A program made the position numbers and the translations under genes. Under the pieces are notes generated by a model. The model worked only from the letters and a program-made list of their open reading frames with translations, searched no databases and was not told the origin of the DNA. A stretch of DNA of 53,421 nucleotides from Octopus bimaculoides (taxonomy: Eukaryota): NCBI RefSeq assembly GCF_001194135.2, contig NC_068989.1:72126293-72179713 (forward strand), in the 5' to 3' direction. This document shows positions 9,519 through 49,010 of the stretch, piece by piece. Numbering within the stretch: the first letter of the stretch is position 1; each line of letters starts with the position of its first letter.

Positions 9519-10048
9519 ACACACACACACACTATACTGAATATCTACAGATCTATTTGAAATGTAGTCTAACATACAAGAAGTCTGTAATGAGTTTTCA
9601 TCACATTTTGAACTGCCACAAAAGATCCAACAATCACCAACTGTTGCACTTTTGTTTTTCTCCTTCGCTCTCTGTTCTATTTCTTTTTATATTAATATCG
9701 CCTCTATAGTCTTCTTGTACTACTTATATTATTTCACCATATACATTTCTGCTTTCTTTAGATAATTTCATCAGCAGACACTCTAAAGTAATTTCTATTG
9801 AACATTCATTAAACAAGGACATCATGCATACTAAACACTTGTACTAAACAGTTGTGCATCATCTGCAACACGAGTAATCAACAACATTGTTGTTATTGTC
9901 ATCATATTACAAAAGTCTTCAGGAAATCTATATTTCGTTTTGTATTGTGGGAACTGGAAAGTTCAATGCCCCACAGTGAGCAGTGGTTTCATCTAAAGCA
10001 ATGGGACTTCTCAATCACTACATTATAAACAGAAGTATTATGTAAACA

Positions 10049-10427
10049 GTGGAGGCACAATGGCCCAGTGGTTAGGGCAGCGGACTCGCGGTCGTGGGAT
10101 TGCGGTTTCAATTCCCAAACCGGGCGTTGCAAGTGTTTATTGAGCGAAAACACTTAAAGCTCCACGAAGCTCTGACAGGGGAAGGTGGCGAACCCTGTTG
10201 TACTCTTCCACCACAACTTTTTCTCACTCTTACTTCCTGTTTCTGTTGTGCCTGTAATTCAAAGGGTCAGCCTTGTCACACTGTGTCACGCTGAATATCC
10301 CCGAGGACTACGTTAAGGGTACACGTGTCTGTGGAGTGCTCAGCCACTTGCACGTTAATTTCACGAGCAGGCTGTTCCGTTGATCGGATCAACTGGAACA
10401 CTCGTCATTGCAACCGACGGAGTGCCA
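10049..10427 (+). mobile_element. SINE family B
   Basis: Has the same head, body and 3' end (gacggagtgcca) as the other B copies but lacks the CAA tail. Confidence 0.9.
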
Positions 10428-11655: not shown

Positions 11656-11944
11656 GCTTTACAACATTATCAAATAATAAAAACTGACAGGTAAAAGAAC
11701 AGAATGGAAGCTAATGTAGAGGGGAAGCTTTCCTCCAAAAATCTAGTTTGGATCTTGGAATGTAGAGTTCAACTGCCAGTTTAGCCTGACTATTAAATCA
11801 GGCCAAACTAAGGACCAGAATATATAATGTAGGTATAATCTATGAACCCAACTCGACTGATGTGACTCCATTATGTAGGAAAAAAATGGTAAACATTTAA
11901 CATCAAACTCTATAATGTTTTTTTACACGCCAGTATAATCTAAA

Positions 11945-12332
11945 GTGGAGGCGCAATGGCCCGGTGGTTAGGGCAGCGGACTCGTAGTCATAGGATCGCG
12001 GTTTCGATTCCCAGACTGGGCGTTGTGAGTGTTTATTGAGCGAAAAAACCTAAAGCTCCACGAGGCTCCGGCAGGGGATGGTGGCGAACCCTGCTGTACT
12101 CTTCCACCACAACTTTCTCTCACTCTTACTTCCTGTTTCTGTTGTGCCTGTAATTCAAAGGATCAGCCTTGTCACACTGTGTCACGCTGAATATCTCCGA
12201 GAACTATGTTAAGGGTACACGTGTCTGTGGAGTGCTCAGCCACTTGCACGTTAATGTCACGAGCAGGCTGTTCCGTTGATCGGATCAACTGGAACCCTCG
12301 ACGTCGTAAGCGATGGAGTGCCAACAACAGCA
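11945..12332 (+). mobile_element. SINE family B, full-length
   Basis: Nearly identical to the 29501 copy. TSD ataatctaa at 11935-11943 and 12333-12341. Confidence 0.92.
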
Positions 12333-16069: not shown

Positions 16070-16340
16070 GGCCCTTAGACTCACAAGGCCAAAATTTAAC
16101 TCTGTTTCCATGGCATATAAGTGACTGAGATTACAATACTCCCCCACACCTCACTTCCTGAATGGGATATTGGTTCATTGTAGGTTTGGATTTCCAGCTA
16201 CTACTGGATTGCTGGAATTCATTTGGAGCTACGTGGACCGGAGTTACATGAAATGAAGTGTTTTACTCAAGAACACAACTCACTGCCTGAACAAGGAATT
16301 GAAACTACAGTCTTACACAGTGAGTACAACACTGTAAGTG
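16070..16340 (-). mobile_element. SINE family E, decayed
   Basis: catgaaatgaagtgttttactcaagaacacaac...ggaattgaaactac is the reverse complement of the E head. Confidence 0.55.
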
Positions 16341-22898: not shown

Positions 22899-23574
22899 AA
22901 TGGAAATAGTTTCAGTTGAAAAAATAGAGATTTGATCGCAGTCTTTAGTTTGGATGAAAACGTAGCGCCAAAAACCATAATTATAGGAATTTATAGCACA
23001 AATAAATAGATGAGATTGTTCGGCTTTCATGCATTTCCCAGAGTAGATTGTGCTGCGTATAAACAGAGTAGGTGAGCCAACAAAGAGAGGAGCCATTGCA
23101 AGAAATAGCAGTCAAATCGCCATCAAAATCACACCTTGCCTTCTTAAAAAGGGTCGTGGGAATACGCATTGAATGGTATAAACCCACATATGTATATATT
23201 TATTTAAAAAAAGGGTGTGATCTGATCTGGAGGTGTTTTGATGTTAGTAAGTCCTTTTTTTTTATTTATAAGGGCTGAAATCGTAGAGACTTTTAAATAA
23301 CAACAATCAACAGAATGACATAGTAATGTAAAACAAAAACCAATTTTTGGTTTTTGAATTAAAAATAGGAATTAAAAGAGAATTTGTGGTAGCGTAAGTT
23401 AGGAGGAGCCCAGAAATAACAGCGAGTAAAATCCCCAATAAATAAAGCGGGGACAAAATAGATAAACAGATATGAGAGAGAGAGAGTGAAAGAGAGAGAG
23501 AGTGAAAGAAAGAGAGACAGAGACAGAGAGAGTGAAAGAAAGAGAGAGAGAGAAGAAGGAATGCCTTGTCTCAC

Positions 23575-23754
23575 CTTGTGTGGAGCATTCAGCAACTTGT
23601 GGACAGCCCCTATTTGATTACATAGTGGTACATCCCTATGGAAAATGAATGTAGGAGGTCGGGTAGGCTCTAGGAACATACTGGTGTTGGAAAAAGGGTC
23701 CATGTCGTCTAGGTATTGAACACGACATAGTAACGTAGCGTCCGATGACGCCAT
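23575..23754 (-). CDS. FHOD3: First coding exon (60 aa) of an FHOD1/FHOD3-type formin, N-terminal GTPase-binding domain
   Basis: Translates to MASSDATLLCRVQYLDDMDPFSNTSMFLEPTRPPTFIFHRDVPLCNQIGAVHKLLNAPHK. This closely matches the FHOD3 N-terminus as I recall it (MATLACRVQFLDDTDPFNSTNFPEPSRPP...VHRLLQAPHK). The ATG context is aacATGG. A phase-0 donor AAG|GTGAGA follows APHK, after which the ORF runs into a CT microsatellite. Confidence 0.95.
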
Positions 23755-25131: not shown

Positions 25132-25172
<41 letters not shown>

Positions 25173-25356
25173 ACAGGAAAATATAAATCTTTTGGTACTA
25201 TTTTTCTCCATTACACGTGTTTCTCATTTTCCAATAAAAATCACAAAGATTTACATGTTATATAGGCATAAGAGATTCCCTATTAGAGAAATTGTCAGCC
25301 ACCAGCTTACGAACCTTTGTATATGTATAATTTCCATCATAAAGTTTCGGCCATAA

Positions 25357-25405
25357 CTTGCCTGATGAGCCTGTGAACGCACGGGCGAAACTTTTGAGTA
25401 ACAAG
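25357..25405 (+). ncRNA. Type I hammerhead ribozyme motif (Penelope-like element type)
   Basis: Core CUGAUGA at 25362-25368. Stem II is GCCUGUG/CACGGGC (7 bp) with loop AACG, followed by GAAA. Stem III is ACU/AGU with loop UUUG. The cleavage triplet is GUA, with the cut after 25400. Stem I is CUUG/CAAG with a C-A mismatch next to the core. Confidence 0.75.
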
Positions 25406-27306
25406 AGATTGACAAGATCAAACGAAAAATATTGATCTCTACTATAGCCTTGAGTACTTGTGACAACCAACTCTAAACGTATGTTTTGTGTGCATTAACC
25501 AATCTTGAAAAAACCATAGGGTAAAAAAGGAAATATAACTGTAAACGTAACATTAATAAACATGCATAAAGACACACACACACACAGTGTTTTTTAAAGC
25601 AAGAGGTACCCCTAAAATGTGATACAAAGCTCAACCCTGAATTAACAGAATATATATAAATTTGTTTATTTTGCACTGACAACACAACCGGTTGTTTCGT
25701 TCAATGAGTTTCTCGGAGTATTTCGAGAAACTCAGTGAAGCAGAACAACATATGTTTATTTTCTACGGCAGTTACTTCTTTTCGTAGTTTCAGTTTATTG
25801 AGCTATGGTAAGGTAAAGGTATATTAGTTTGACTGTAAATAGTTTCAAGATTAGTTTTTATTGACACATTCATTCTATCAGGCATCCAGATTATAGAGTG
25901 AGCACCTGAAAAGGAGAGACTAAAATATGATTTAGGGAATTATGTCAAACATGAAAATAGCAGTGTACGGTGCAGTTAATAGCTATAGGGTATCGTAGTT
26001 TTTTTGGCAGTTACACAATGTCGTAAATTGTTTTAAATGTGAAAAAAGAATCACTTTCTGATAGTACGCAGAATTTTTAAAAAGCCGTTGCAGAAACTGA
26101 AAGTGGCGTATTGATAAAACTGGTGTAAAAAATACTGCAGAGATCACTGATATGAAATTCAGTAAGGTTATGGTGCAAGTCAGGTGACAATAACAGCAAT
26201 AATATTTCAAAACGTCTGGATGGCTTTGAATAAACCTCTGATCAGAAACTGTGATTTCAAACAAAAGAGATCTAAGTTCCAGAATAATTGGTTCTAAAAC
26301 TAACATTCTTCTCAAAAATATATCAATACTTATTGCTAATACACTAAATATAAGCAACTTTTTTCAAGAAGCAGGCCGCATGTGAGATTATTAATTATTA
26401 GTCGAAGTACGCTGCTAAAAAAAATTCAAGGTATTTTTTCATAAGCGTGGCATACAGCAAACCGTAGTTTGCTCATGACTGTAATACATCAATAATAAAC
26501 CATCAGTCAAAACCAAGCAAAGGGACGTCTTTTTGGAAAGGGGACTCCTTTTTCTGAAGAAATAAGAATAAATAAATGAGCTTCTCTTATAGTGGTTGCG
26601 TGAAAGGTGGATGGAAATGCGAGAATATGTGAGATCCATAGAGTAGATCTAAATGAAAGAATTTGTTCCGCTCCATTATTCAATTCCCAAATACTAAATC
26701 GATGTTTGTATTATATCTTTCTGATATAAATTATTTTGCTAAAGTGGATTTCTATCAACAGATAGAAATGTGTTCTAAAGCAAGATAAATTACAACAACA
26801 AATACACCAATTATCTTTTTTTTCCAGAAAGACACGTCTTTCATATGGAAGACACGGTCCTTCAAATACAGCTAGCACCATCTTTCAGAGAGCAACTAAA
26901 CATGTTGCTGGAAGTCATACCGATAATGTTTATTACTTATGAAGATGATGCATATATTAGTGAAAAAAAAAAAGCAATTACTTGAAAGTCTAAATTTTAA
27001 AGTAGATAAGATAATATAATATATCAAGTAAAGTGATCAAACGAATTAAGTCACTGTCAGAGACTTATAAGCGCGCGCACGCAAACACACACACACACAG
27101 AGGCATGACTGAATGATTAAGAAGCTCACTTTGCAATCACGTGGTTTTGGGTTCAGTCCAACAGCGTGACATCGTGCTGACCAATGCTTTATGGAGCAAT
27201 CTCGTTGGACAGAAACTATATGGAAAGCCGCTGTATATATATATGTGTATGCATGTGTGTGTGTGTGTGTGTGTGTATGTGTGTGCATGTATGGATGGAT
27301 GTGTAT

Positions 27307-29320: not shown

Positions 29321-29500
29321 AAGGGAACTGGGAGTTTCGTGCAGTAGATGTGGGTTTAGGGAAATGCTGCCTGTTTGAGATCTTCTGTCGTCTGTGAAAC
29401 AGCTTGCCCCATTGTAACGCTATAGTTATTACCAGGGACGCATTTGATATTAGATAGGTAGGCTTCCTGTTTTAGTTTAGGTCATATATATAGCTGTGAA

Positions 29501-29887
29501 GTGGAGGCGCAATGGCCCAGTGGTTAGGGCAGCGGACTCGCGGTCATAGGATCGCGGTTTCGATTCCCAGATCGGGCGTTGTGAGTGTTTATTGAACGAA
29601 AACACCTAAAGCTCCACGAGGCTCCGGCAGGGGATGGTGGCGAACCCTGCTGTACTCTTTCACCACAACTTTGTCTCACTCTTACTTCCTGTTTCTGTTG
29701 GGCCTGTAATTCAAAGGGTCAGCCTTGTCACACTGTGTCACGCTGAATATCCCCGAGAACTACGTTAAGAGTACACGTGTCTGTGGAGTGCTCAGCCACT
29801 TGCACGTTAATTTCACGAGCAGGCTGTTCCGTTGATCGGATCAACTGGAACCCTCGACGTCGTAAGCGACGGAGTGCCAACAACAAC
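29501..29887 (+). mobile_element. tRNA-derived SINE family B, full-length young copy
   Basis: A box TGGCCCAGTGG, B box GGTTTCGATTCC and a (CAA)n tail. An 11-bp TSD atagctgtgaa lies at 29490-29500 and 29888-29898. Confidence 0.92.
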
Positions 29888-39920: not shown

Positions 39921-40892
39921 ATGTATGTGTGCCTGTGCCTCCAGTACTAGATTAATCCTGTAACACTAAATAATTGATTGGTTGATAAGTTTAGCCAATG
40001 TCATCATAAATAGTTGCAATTTCATAACATGAAAGATAAAACTGTGAAGTTCAAAAGGAAGAAATTTTTCTTGTGATTTACTAATGGTGGAGATTATAGT
40101 CAAGTGATTTGGAATCACAAATAGAACTTACAACATTTTAGGTCAGGCACAAAGCATTGATTGCATTCATATATCAAAATAGAAGGAAACAGATACAGAA
40201 ATATAGGTAGAGAGACAGACAGATAGGTAGATAAACAGAGAGAAAGAGAGAGAGAGAGAGGTGCAGATAAAGGCAAAGAAAGAATCATAGATAAAACACG
40301 ATACACAAATATGAGAGTGGGGAACAGACATAAACACACACACACACACATGTGCGTGTTCATGCACACATGCATGCACATGCACGCACAGAGACAGAGT
40401 TGATAGAGTTAATGACAGATAGAAAGATAGACGCACACGTATTACAAATGTGAAAATATTGGAGTAACTGACAGTTACAGTTTCCCTTTGTTAATGCTGA
40501 AATCAACATAGGGCAACTGCTGAGCTGTTGATGTCTACCAAGGCAGAAATGTGTTCATATCATACATATATATATATATAAACAATATATGAGTATATGC
40601 ATATACATGTACANNNNNNNNNNNNNNNNNNNNNNNNNNNNNNNNNNNNNNNNNNNNNNNNNNNNNNNNNNNNNNNNNNNNNNNNNNNNNNNNNNNNNNN
40701 NNNNNNNNNNNNNNNNNNNNNNNNNNNNNNNNNNNNNNNNNNNNNNNNNNNNNNNNNNNNNNNNNNNNNNNNNNNNNNNNNNNNNNNNNNNNNNNNNNNN
40801 NNNNNNNNNNNNNNNNNNNNNNNNNNNNNNNNNNNNNNNNNNNNNNNNNNNNNNNNNNNNNNNNNNNNNNNNNNNNNNNNNNNNNNNNNNNN

Positions 40893-41064
40893 TATTTCGG
40901 CCAGAGTTCTTTCGTCACACTTCTGTGACCTCATCAGTGGTCCTTTGTTTCCTTCCTTCTTATGTGTGTCTCACCTTCTTATGTGAGACACACATAAGAA
41001 AGAAGGAAACAAAGGACCACTGATGAGGTCACAGAAGTGTGACGAAAGAACTCTGGCCGAAATA
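40893..41064. repeat. Long inverted repeat: 82-bp arms, 1 mismatch, 8-nt loop
   Basis: 40893-40974 is the reverse complement of 40983-41064 except for one C/T. The loop is cttcttat. The left arm is cut off by the gap. Confidence 0.95.
41014..41058 (+). ncRNA. Minimal or degenerate type I hammerhead motif; a mirror copy is on the minus strand at 40899-40943
   Basis: Reads GGACCA-CUGAUGA-G-GUCAC(AGAAGU)GUGAC-GAAA-G-AA-CUC-UGGCC. The core and stem II are present and stem I is GG(A)CCA/UGGCC. Stem III is only 2 bp, and there is one extra G after the core. Confidence 0.5.
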
Positions 41065-46681: not shown

Positions 46682-47324
46682 TTATTGTAATTATTTGACA
46701 ATAGGGGAAGTTATTATTTAACAAGGTTGAAAAGCATTCGAATTTAGCCGGCAGCGAGAATTAGCGCGTCGTTACAATGGCAGCATTAGGACAGTTATGT
46801 GTGTGTGTGTGTGTGTTATTGTGTATGCGTATGTAAGAGAGAGGGAAAGAAAAAAGAGAAGTAGAGAGTACCTCTGTATGAGAAAGGAAGAAAGAGAGAG
46901 AGAACGCGTGTTATTGTGAGTTTGTGCGAGAGAGAGTGTGAGAAAAAGTGGCAGAGAAAAAGTAAGAAGGAGAGAGAGAGAGAGAGATTGGGAATTTAGT
47001 GTTCCCAGATTAAAGCGGAACCAGTACGGAAATTACAATAAAGGAAACTAATGAAAAATACAAGTTTTACTTTATTTTTTTTGAAGTATTTATGAATATC
47101 TGTGTCAAAAGAAGCAAAAACTTCGATTGAACATCCAAATAAATTAGTATTTCCCAACATTTTAGTTTCATTCCTCAGATCCTGCTAGTGCAGTCGATTC
47201 TGTTTTTTGCTGCCGAGGGTCAATGTCGAATTTAAACATGAGCCAAACAATATTAGAAATGTAGTCGCGATAGCAGTATTGTTGTTGCAGTTGATTTCTC
47301 GCTCATCCCTGTGCTAGTAGACGT

Positions 47325-47631
47325 TTGTTGTTGTTGGCACTCCGTCGCTTACGACGTCGAGGGTTCCAGTTGATCCGATCAACGAAACAGCCTGCTCGTG
47401 AAATTAACGTGCAAGTGGCTGAGCACTCCACAGACACGTGTACCCTTAACGTAGTTCTCGGGGATATTTAGCGTGACACAGTGTGACAAGGCTGACCCTT
47501 TGAATTACAGGCACAACAGAAACAAGAAGTAAGAGTGAGAGAAAGTTGTGGTGGAAGAGTACAGCAGGGTTCGCCACCATCCCCTGCCGGAGCCTCGTGG
47601 AGCTTTAGGTGTTTTCGCTCAATAAACACTA
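47325..47631 (-). mobile_element. SINE family B, 5' end lost in the gap
   Basis: Reverse complement of the B body and (CAA)n tail. Confidence 0.9.
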
Positions 47632-48410: not shown

Positions 48411-48908
48411 TTATTATAGAAGGAACAATGTGTGTCAAATGAAGGAACAGAGTGTCAAATGAACTTCTAATTGTCATTCGTCTCAACACAGACATATACT
48501 CATACATACATGCTTATATATATATACGTACACACACACACGTATACACATACAGAGTGATACTGAAATCTATAGCGAATTGTGGCCATATAACACTTAA
48601 GGTACAAGAAGAATTTTTAAGCAATTACAATTACATGCTACAGTAATGAAAAGCGTCAGCATTAGCGAAAGTGTTTTTCAAAATGAGAAAAATGGGCAAG
48701 GGAGAGAATTCCGAAGTTTAAATTGATTAAAAATGAAATGCAGCCGAGGAAATGCGCTTGATGTTCCATCTAATAAGAATTATCAAGGAATAAGTCTCCA
48801 GTCCTTACTTTTGCTGTAAGAATTCACAAGGTTTTTCTATCTTCAAAATAATTTCATACTCAACATCGAATAGGGATAGAAATAACGAATGAGATAATGT
48901 TGACTTAC

Positions 48909-49010
48909 CTTAGCAACATCAATTGCAAACGAGTCCAGCAATTCATCCAAAGTTTGGTAACCTTGGAATTTTGTGTCATCACCGTCCCATCCGGGTACGC
49001 GAATGACCTT
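48909..49010 (-). CDS. 3' part of an internal exon, probably of the same unidentified gene; 5' end lies in the gap
   Basis: Translates to KVIRVPGWDGDDTKFQGYQTLDELLDSFAIDVAK, followed by a phase-0 donor AAG|GTAAGT. It is on the same strand as, and 2.2 kb downstream of, the large exon. Confidence 0.7.

What the first reader, a model, noticed from the sequence alone, without database searches (positions are those of the whole stretch)
25357..25405. Near-canonical hammerhead ribozyme just upstream of the formin gene
All conserved core nucleotides are present (CUGAUGA, GAAA, GUA), with a 7-bp stem II and a 3-bp stem III closed by a tetraloop. It lies 1.6 kb upstream of the FHOD ATG and on the opposite strand. 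Type I hammerheads are known from Penelope-like elements and retrozymes, so it may be a relic. Its position means it could cut a divergent promoter transcript, or give it a defined 5' end about 300 nt upstream of the hairpin and splice-donor candidate at 25705-25813. The C-A mismatch at the base of stem I may reduce activity. Any host function is my inference.
Basis: partly seen in the sequence, partly recalled or inferred. Interest (0 to 1): 0.75.

Follow-up and report, generated by a model that had tools for sequence, protein, structure and literature searches.

The report
Solitary transposon-type hammerhead ribozyme motif
A complete hammerhead self-cleaving RNA motif does sit between two octopus genes, but it looks like an ordinary single leftover copy of the hammerheads that retrotransposons scatter through invertebrate genomes, and nothing shows the host uses it.

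Summary
The motif is present exactly as described, at window 25357-25405 on the + strand. It has an intact CUGAUGA/GAAA/UA core, a 7-bp helix II, a 3-bp helix III with a tetraloop, and a 4-bp helix I after an A·C mismatch. Cleavage would fall between 25400 and 25401.

It is not a chance match. About 0.0007 motifs of this quality are expected per window. The window also holds two more hammerheads (an inverted pair at 40.9-41.06 kb), and a relative's contig holds another.

The window is Octopus bimaculoides. The motif lies in the 2.1-kb gap between the last exon of a hornerin-like gene and the FHOD start codon. It is antisense to both genes, and no + strand gene is annotated.

Its long helix II, short open helix I and small helix III match the hammerheads of Penelope-like retroelements (PLEs). 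Most of those occur as solitary copies. It lacks their bulged base and palindromic helix III. No second copy, tandem repeat or PLE coding remnant is nearby.

Rfam scores it below threshold, but also misses hammerheads next to PLE ORFs that I fetched as controls. Folding favours an inactive stem that sequesters GAAA.

Verdict: a retroelement relic, probably weakly active or inactive. Host function is unsupported. Copy number and orthologue conservation could not be tested.

The parts
25357..25361 (+). Helix I, 5' strand (CUUG pairs; C25361 = position 2.1, mismatched with A25401)
   Evidence: read directly; the pairing was used in the energy evaluation
25362..25368 (+). Catalytic box CUGAUGA (C3-A9)
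25369..25386 (+). Helix II hairpin GCCUGUG-AACG-CACGGGC (7 bp including G10.1-C11.1 and one G-U)
   Evidence: pair probabilities above 0.99
25387..25390 (+). Catalytic box GAAA (G12 A13 A14 A15.1)
25390..25399 (+). Helix III hairpin A-U, C-G, U-A with loop UUUG; the loop is not palindromic
   Evidence: pair probability only about 0.001-0.01 in the thermodynamic ensemble
25400..25401 (+). Predicted cleavage site: after A25400 (H17 of the GUA triplet); the new 5'-OH end would be at 25401
   Evidence: position inferred from hammerhead numbering applied; cleavage itself was not tested
25401..25405 (+). Helix I, 3' strand (A·C mismatch, then CAAG)
25341..25352 (+). Upstream arm AAAGUUUCGGCC, complementary to 25383-25394 (GGGCGAAACUUU). 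It forms a competing stem that sequesters the GAAA box and the helix III 5' strand
   Evidence: 12 nt, 92% complementary; pair probability about 0.8; MFE -23.6 against -13.2 kcal/mol for the hammerhead fold
25891..25905 (-). Context: last coding mini-exon (VLTL-stop) of the hornerin-like gene, with AATAAA signals downstream of it on the - strand
23570..23754 (-). Context: FHOD exon 1, ATG at 23754. The 3' boundary is approximate (my estimate from the ORF translation)
   Evidence: (hits carry PF18382)
41020..41053 (+). Second hammerhead in the window, of the minimal kind found in Penelope-like elements: ggacca CUGAUGA g GUCACA GAAG UGUGAC GAAA G AA C UC^ uggcc
40904..40937 (-). Inverted twin of the 41020 hammerhead. 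It is the other arm of the 82-nt palindrome next to an assembly gap

Best explanation
This is a solitary hammerhead ribozyme (HHR) motif of type I topology, left in Octopus bimaculoides intergenic DNA by a retroelement. The most likely source is a 5'-truncated or decayed copy of a Penelope-like element (PLE) terminal repeat, or a non-autonomous derivative of one.

In the parent element, the hammerhead would cut the + strand transcript 3' of the GUA triplet. That leaves a 2',3'-cyclic phosphate and a 5'-OH end, and so processes element RNA out of longer or multimeric transcripts.

In this copy the catalytic core is intact, but I infer it to be weakly active or inactive. Helix I has only 4 bp after an A·C mismatch. 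Helix III is marginal. There is no partner copy with which to form a dimer. An upstream 8-12 nt segment pairs with the GAAA box.

Shown: the motif, that it is not a chance match, its genomic position, its architecture, and the competing fold. Inferred: the retroelement origin, the low activity, and the absence of host function.
For: - The motif is complete and correctly spaced.
- About 0.0007 motifs of this quality are expected per window. The same 53 kb also holds an inverted pair of PLE-style hammerheads. A 22-kb contig from a relative holds another type I hammerhead. Hammerhead motifs are therefore dense in this lineage.
- Published PLE minimal hammerheads have a helix II of 7-8 bp, a helix I of 4-5 bp without a defined loop 1, a G10.1-C11.1 pair and a small helix III. 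They occur mostly as single copies attributed to truncated PLEs, and they cleave poorly in vitro (PMC4209133; PMC6765202). Here helix II is 7 bp, helix I is 4 bp, and G10.1-C11.1 is present.
- My descriptor found a hammerhead 150-850 nt 3' of the ORF, on the same strand, in all three PLE loci I fetched as controls.
- Rfam missed every one of those control hammerheads. Its miss here is therefore not evidence against the motif.
- PLEs are a sizeable, anciently expanded repeat class in Octopus (PMC13282606). 235 Rfam Hammerhead_1 loci were reported in the giant squid (PMC6962438).
- The motif is antisense to both flanking genes, and no + strand gene is called.
- The hammerhead fold is about 10 kcal/mol less stable than the MFE. 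Its helix I and III pair probabilities are at most 0.03.
Against: - No second copy of this sequence was found in the window, or in about 48 kb of additional cephalopod DNA plus the three control loci. Membership of a repeat family is therefore not demonstrated.
- There is no PLE ORF or coding remnant. No long ORF lies within about 6 kb. tblastn with 120 PLE proteins found nothing significant anywhere in the window. Those probes come from one PLE clade only.
- The motif lacks the unpaired base between A9 and G10.1.
- It lacks the palindromic helix III and loop that Cervera & de la Pena list as hallmarks.
- Its real helix III hairpin and GUA triplet differ from the ACGU-type helix III of the three control loci.
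- Activity, transcription and conservation were not tested.
Confidence: 0.72

Rival explanations
1. The host has taken over this ribozyme. A + strand transcript (a promoter-upstream or antisense RNA divergent from FHOD, or antisense to the 3' end of the hornerin-like gene) is self-cleaved at 25400/25401. This terminates or destabilises it, or gives a downstream RNA a defined 5' end.
For: The catalytic core is fully intact, which is not guaranteed in an old relic. The motif lies in a short 2.1-kb intergenic gap next to a promoter region. Host-conserved hammerheads exist in other animals, such as the intronic hammerheads of amniotes (my own knowledge; the work is cited in PMC4209133).
Against: No + strand gene or ORF is present. 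Predicted folding strongly favours an inactive stem. Helix I is weak and mismatched. There is no evidence of conservation or transcription, because neither could be tested. Solitary copies of transposon hammerheads are the common case.
Confidence: 0.05
2. The match is a coincidence: unrelated sequence that happens to fit the hammerhead descriptor.
For: About 0.0007 such motifs per 53 kb scales to tens of chance matches in a genome of about 2.7 Gb (the extrapolation and genome size are mine). No second copy was found. All Rfam scores are below threshold.
Against: The observed density of hammerhead motifs in the cephalopod DNA at hand is about a thousand times the chance rate. Features outside the descriptor are also right: the G10.1-C11.1 pair, the GUA triplet and a GC-rich 7-bp helix II in a locally AT-rich region.
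Confidence: 0.03
3. It is a type III hammerhead, as in the Rfam alignment. Helix III would be the open stem AAAGU (25341-25345) paired with ACUUU (25390-25394). Cleavage would follow GUU, between 25346 and 25347. Helix I would be a hairpin at 25347-25361.
For: The only Rfam hit is Hammerhead_3 over 25339-25396, at 24.5 bits and E = 0.005 for the 401 nt searched. The 5-bp stem exists and extends to a 12-nt inverted repeat.
Against: The helix I hairpin would be only C-G plus two G-U pairs with a 7-nt loop, and it is destabilising. The type III fold scores -7.9 kcal/mol against -11.7 for type I. Extending the stem pairs UUC with GAA and so destroys the GAAA core. The score is half the gathering threshold.
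Confidence: 0.03
4. It is one unit of a cephalopod family of small, non-autonomous hammerhead elements (retrozyme-like RNAs) whose hammerheads have a stable helix III and act as monomers, rather than a relic of a PLE terminal repeat.
For: The other cephalopod hammerhead seen (L003 8305-8268) also has a real helix III hairpin and a GUA triplet. It sits in a compact rod-like element of about 165 nt flanked by microsatellites. The motif here is likewise flanked by (TG)17 at 25136-25170 and a (CA) run at about 25573-25587. Animal retrozymes are proposed to derive from PLE terminal repeats (bioRxiv 10.64898/2026.07.22.740005).
Against: There is no tandem repeat here. The 402-nt segment between the microsatellites has no unusual fold (z = -0.8). 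There is no sequence similarity to the L003 element outside the core. Microsatellites are so frequent in this window (61 Tandem Repeats Finder rows in 53 kb) that flanking ones mean little.
Confidence: 0.12

Closest known systems
Minimal hammerheads of Penelope-like elements (min-HHRs; Cervera & de la Pena 2014, PMC4209133)
   Same: Type I topology, an intact CUGANGA/GAAA/UH core, a long helix II (7 bp), a short open helix I (4 bp) with no defined loop 1, a G10.1-C11.1 pair and a small helix III. It is a solitary genomic copy in an invertebrate, and low activity as a monomer is expected.
   Different: There is no unpaired base between A9 and G10.1. Helix III is a real 3-bp hairpin with a non-palindromic UUUG loop, not ACGU or a palindromic loop. 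No flanking RT/GIY-YIG ORF or terminal repeat is detectable. Family membership is not shown.
Canonical metazoan type I hammerheads in non-LTR retrozymes and satellite repeats (Cervera & de la Pena 2020, PMC7229834; Rfam RF00163)
   Same: Type I topology. Helix III is 2-3 bp capped by a tetraloop, as described for invertebrate retrozyme hammerheads. The surrounding sequence is AT-rich.
   Different: It is not in a 170-400 bp tandem repeat. Helix II is 7 bp rather than about 4. Helix I is 4 bp rather than 6, with no loop 1 / loop 2 tertiary-contact pattern. RF00163 does not match.
SINE-like hammerhead elements of Schistosoma (Sm-alpha / Sj-alpha; reviewed in PMC6765202)
   Same: A dispersed, retroelement-borne type I hammerhead in an invertebrate genome.
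   Different: Those are high-copy elements with an internal promoter and efficient, well-folded hammerheads. No promoter-bearing unit or other copies were seen here.
Host-conserved intronic hammerheads of amniotes (HH9/HH10; my own knowledge, work cited in PMC4209133)
   Same: A single-copy hammerhead close to protein-coding genes.
   Different: Those lie on the sense strand inside introns and are conserved across species. This one is intergenic and antisense to both neighbouring genes, and its conservation is untested.

Membership tests
Hammerhead ribozyme (any type) | Conserved core: C3 U4 G5 A6 N7 G8 A9, G12 A13 A14, an A15.1-U16.1 pair, and H17 that is not G | tested here: met
   CUGAUGA at 25362-25368, GAAA at 25387-25390, U25399 pairs with A25390, and H17 = A25400.
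Hammerhead ribozyme (any type) | Three helices around the core, with correct connectivity | tested here: met
   helix I 4 bp, helix II 7 bp, helix III 3-4 bp. Helices I and III are thermodynamically marginal.
Hammerhead ribozyme (any type) | Site-specific self-cleavage | not testable with these tools
   This needs in vitro transcription and cleavage, or mapping of 5'-OH / cyclic-phosphate ends.
Rfam hammerhead models (clan CL00010: RF00163, RF00008, RF02276 and others) | Score at or above the family gathering threshold | tested here: not met
   no hit at gathering; the best hit is Hammerhead_3 at 24.5 and 22 bits against a threshold of 48.5, and no type I hit is listed. Control: the hammerheads next to the three fetched PLE ORFs are also missed at E <= 0.1.
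PLE minimal hammerhead (Cervera & de la Pena 2014) | Long helix II (6-8 bp) with G10.1-C11.1, and a short helix I (4-5 bp) without a defined loop 1 | tested here: met
   Compare the description and the control hammerheads.
PLE minimal hammerhead (Cervera & de la Pena 2014) | An unpaired nucleotide between A9 and G10.1 | tested here: not met
   G25369 directly follows A25368 and pairs with C25386. All hammerheads in the three control loci, and the 41020 motif, have the bulge.
PLE minimal hammerhead (Cervera & de la Pena 2014) | A minimal or palindromic helix III and loop 3 that allow an extended helix III in a dimer | tested here: not met
   ACUUUUGAGU is not self-complementary. In a dimer the loop would give U·G, U·U, U·U, G·U (read). 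Helix III is nonetheless short.
PLE minimal hammerhead (Cervera & de la Pena 2014) | Location in a terminal repeat flanking an RT + GIY-YIG ORF | tested here: not met
   No long ORF lies within about 6 kb, and tblastn with 120 PLE proteins gave nothing significant. Most published genomic copies are likewise solitary, so this does not exclude a PLE origin.
PLE minimal hammerhead (Cervera & de la Pena 2014) | Belongs to a genome-wide consensus family that shows covariation | not testable with these tools
   No searchable octopus genome was available. No copy was found in the roughly 100 kb of cephalopod DNA at hand. The metagenome pattern scan returned 0.
Metazoan non-LTR retrozyme | Head-to-tail tandem repeats of about 170-400 bp, each carrying a type I hammerhead | tested here: not met
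   Tandem Repeats Finder and the repeat search show no such array at 25.0-25.9 kb. This hammerhead sequence occurs only once in the window.
Metazoan non-LTR retrozyme | [quoted passage not shown] | not testable with these tools
   No transcriptome data could be reached.

The most novel reading that the evidence does not exclude
The motif is functional rather than a relic. One version: it is a conserved ribozyme that cleaves an unannotated + strand RNA in the FHOD promoter region. Another version: it belongs to an undescribed cephalopod family of small hammerhead elements with stable helix III hairpins and GUA sites (as in the rod-like element on L003), which act as monomers and may form small circular RNAs.
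Probability: 0.1. Interest if true: 0.5.

Novelty: new member of a known kind. Interest (0 to 1): 0.18.

Why it matters
It matters little on its own. Hammerhead motifs from Penelope-like elements and retrozymes are already known to be massively widespread in invertebrate genomes, and mostly as solitary copies.

The case does give three useful points:
- Rfam hammerhead models miss this class entirely, including the hammerheads I found next to PLE ORFs as controls. Annotation based on Rfam therefore under-counts them.
- At least two architectures coexist in cephalopod DNA. One is a bulged minimal form with a tiny helix III. The other has a real helix III hairpin and a GUA site.
- If the motif proved conserved or expressed at this locus, it would be a rare candidate for a host-adopted ribozyme beside a promoter.

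Tried and rejected
- **Rfam as arbiter.** There was no hit at gathering score. I rejected this as negative evidence after the control hammerheads next to PLE ORFs also went undetected.
- **Type III reading from the Rfam alignment.** Rejected on the energy and the quality of helix I.
- **Orthologue conservation.**
  - The FHOD exon 1 search gave only two 65%-identical ORFs on contigs of about 1 kb.
  - The hornerin-like ORF led to one relative contig (L003), which does not reach the FHOD-upstream region.
  - The O. bimaculoides chromosome locus (L004) is 100% identical to the window wherever the two align, so it is not an independent check.
- **Repeat-family membership through ORFs.**
  - HMMER search of the antisense reading frame across the motif, against 1.84 billion proteins, gave only spurious repetitive bacterial proteins.
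  - Exact look-ups of the two antisense ORFs found nothing.
- **DNA pattern scan.** A scan of JGI metagenome contigs for this hammerhead's core plus helix III returned 0.
- **PLE proteins of Octopus.** My PLE RT/EN probe (a consensus written from memory) retrieved 3314 PLE proteins. None of the 120 listed carried a cephalopod name, though most have no name at all.
- **Covariance model from the control hammerheads.** Abandoned, because MAFFT put helix II in different registers in different sequences.
- **Larger structured element between the flanking microsatellites.** No signal (z = -0.8).
- **Similarity of the flanks to the other hammerhead loci.** None found.

Full report
**Observation.** The + strand at 25357-25405 reads CUUGC-CUGAUGA-GCCUGUG-AACG-CACGGGC-GAAA-CU-UUUG-AG-U-A-ACAAG.
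- In hammerhead numbering, C3-A9 is 25362-25368 and G12-A15.1 is 25387-25390. U16.1 is 25399 and H17 is A25400.
- Helix II has 7 bp, including G10.1-C11.1 and one G-U.
- Helix III is A-U, C-G, U-A closed by UUUG.
- Helix I is four Watson-Crick pairs (25357-25360 with 25402-25405) after an A25401·C25361 mismatch next to the core.
- Cleavage would fall between 25400 and 25401.

**Chance.** I wrote a descriptor for the core plus three helices and ran it on simulated sequences from a second-order Markov model of the window's composition.
- At the observed quality (helix II at least 7 bp, helix III at least 3 bp, at least 4 of 6 pairs in helix I) it expects 0.0007 motifs per window on both strands. 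A loose version expects 0.09.
- An extended descriptor, allowing a bulged base after A9 and 2-nt loops, expects 0.0007 motifs with helix II of at least 6 bp. It finds three: this one, and an inverted pair at 41020-41053 (+) and 40937-40904 (-).
- The same descriptor finds a type I hammerhead on a 22-kb contig of a relative (L003).
- Hammerhead motifs are therefore roughly a thousand times denser in this DNA than chance predicts.

**Rfam.**
- No family reaches its gathering score anywhere in the window.
- With permissive settings the only hammerhead hit is the type III model, at 24.5 bits against a threshold of 48.5. It is carried by the core and helix II.
- Trimming the region does not bring up a type I hit.
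- This is a weak negative. I fetched three loci that carry Penelope-like element (PLE) ORFs. Each has a minimal hammerhead 150-850 nt 3' of the ORF on the same strand. Rfam detects none of them even at E <= 0.1.

**Where it is.**
- A 100%-identical cluster member of a window-encoded ORF is XP_014769630.1, 'hornerin-like', from Octopus bimaculoides.
- The locus is CM046609.1:72142183-72205863 of GCA_001194135.2. It is 100% identical to the window wherever the two align.
- Both annotated genes are on the window's - strand. The hornerin-like gene ends in a four-codon exon (VLTL-stop, 25905-25891), with AATAAA signals just downstream. FHOD starts at ATG 23754.
- The hammerhead lies in the 2.1-kb gap between them, on the opposite strand. 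It is about 490 nt past one gene's stop codon and 1.6 kb before the other's start codon.
- No + strand gene is called, and no + strand ORF of note exists.

**What it resembles.** Cervera & de la Pena (PMC4209133) describe the minimal hammerheads of metazoan PLEs as follows:
- type I topology;
- a helix II of 7-8 bp;
- a conserved G10.1-C11.1 pair;
- an unpaired base after A9;
- a tiny or palindromic helix III;
- present in thousands of copies per genome, mostly as single motifs attributed to truncated PLEs, and sometimes as pairs on opposite strands 100-700 bp apart;
- poor cleavage in vitro, and only as dimers (see also PMC6765202).

The 25.36-kb motif matches the helix I and II pattern and the solitary state. 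It lacks the bulged base and has a real, non-palindromic helix III hairpin.

The 41-kb pair matches the published form almost point for point, including the opposite-strand arrangement.

Canonical retrozyme hammerheads differ. They have a helix I of 6 bp, a helix II of 4 bp and loop-loop contacts, and they sit in 170-400 bp tandem repeats (PMC7229834). No tandem array exists here.

PLEs are a substantial and anciently expanded repeat class in Octopus (PMC13282606). Rfam-type hammerheads have been counted in the giant squid genome (PMC6962438).

**What I could not show.**
- No second copy of this particular sequence exists in the window, in the about 48 kb of additional cephalopod DNA, or in the three control loci.
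- There is no PLE coding remnant. No long ORF lies within about 6 kb. tblastn with 120 PLE proteins gave nothing significant in the window.
- Searches meant to reveal a repeat family or an orthologous locus all came back empty or fell short.
- The retroelement origin is therefore an inference from architecture, from motif density and from the literature. It is not a demonstrated family membership.

**Likely activity.**
- In a 91-nt context the hammerhead secondary structure scores -13.2 kcal/mol with the rest of the segment free to fold. The minimum free energy is -23.6.
- The favoured fold pairs AAAGUUUC (25341-25348) with GAAACUUU (25387-25394) at about 0.8 probability, which buries the GAAA box.
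- The pairs of helices I and III have probabilities of 0.03 or less, even when the upstream competitor is left out.
- Nearest-neighbour energies ignore the tertiary stabilisation of the hammerhead core, so this is indicative only.
- Together with the 1.1/2.1 mismatch, a 4-bp helix I and the lack of a partner copy, I expect weak or no self-cleavage from the native sequence. My own rough estimate is a 30% chance of detectable cleavage in vitro.
- The type III topology suggested by the Rfam alignment is worse still, at -7.9 against -11.7 kcal/mol, and its helix I is destabilising.

**Verdict.**
- The best reading is an ordinary solitary hammerhead left by a Penelope-like or related non-autonomous retroelement. 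It is a new member of a well-known kind.
- The proposed host function is unsupported and has a low prior. It needs + strand transcription and cross-species conservation, neither of which could be examined here.

Noticed in passing
window 40893-41064: An 82-nt-arm palindrome, 99% complementary with an 8-nt spacer, abuts the N gap at 40614-40892. Each arm carries a PLE-style minimal hammerhead with a bulged G after A9, a 6-bp helix II, a 2-bp helix III with an AA loop, and a CUC cleavage triplet. Inverted truncated copies are typical of PLE insertions. The near-perfect identity next to a gap could also be an assembly artefact. Rfam in E-value mode calls it many miRNA families, all far below gathering score.
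   Followed up: partly
L003 8150-8400 (- strand); hammerhead at 8305-8268: A contig from a relative (ENA ERZ21867824; 66% protein identity in the hornerin-like gene) carries a type I hammerhead with a 5-bp helix III and a GUA site. It lies inside a near-perfect hairpin of about 165 nt (MFE -106.6 kcal/mol, z = -13.6), flanked by (TA)n and (TC)n(TA)n. It looks like a small rod-shaped hammerhead element.
   Followed up: partly
window 25707-25744: A perfect 11-bp hairpin (TGAGTTTCTCG / CGAGAAACTCA, 8-nt loop) lies about 150 nt 3' of the hornerin-like stop codon on the - strand.
   Followed up: no
window 25891-25905 and 48906-49010 (- strand): The annotated hornerin-like gene model ends in a four-codon exon (VLTL-stop) 23 kb from the preceding exon and only 2.1 kb upstream of the FHOD ATG. 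This terminal exon could be a mis-joined 5' non-coding exon of FHOD.
   Followed up: no
window 10047-10346, 11943-12242, 29499-29798 (+) and 47318-47630 (inverted): A dispersed repeat of about 300 nt is present in four copies at 92-97% identity. It is probably a young SINE-like family. A second, more diverged family of about 155 nt with ATT-rich tails is at 16316, 16778, 38220, 44544 and 48184.
   Followed up: no
window 25136-25170 and about 25573-25587: A (TG)17 run and a (CA) run bracket the roughly 400-nt segment that holds the hammerhead. PLEs are reported to prefer microsatellite targets. Microsatellites are so frequent in this window that this is weak evidence.
   Followed up: partly
L005 6133-6166; L006 6425-6459, 7062-7028, 1737-1703; L007 5729-5762, 2039-2006: All three fetched PLE loci (a JGI metagenome contig, lamprey, and the bee Megachile) have minimal hammerheads 3' of the RT/EN ORF, with an ACGU helix III and a bulged base. 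None is detected by any Rfam hammerhead model at E <= 0.1.
   Followed up: yes
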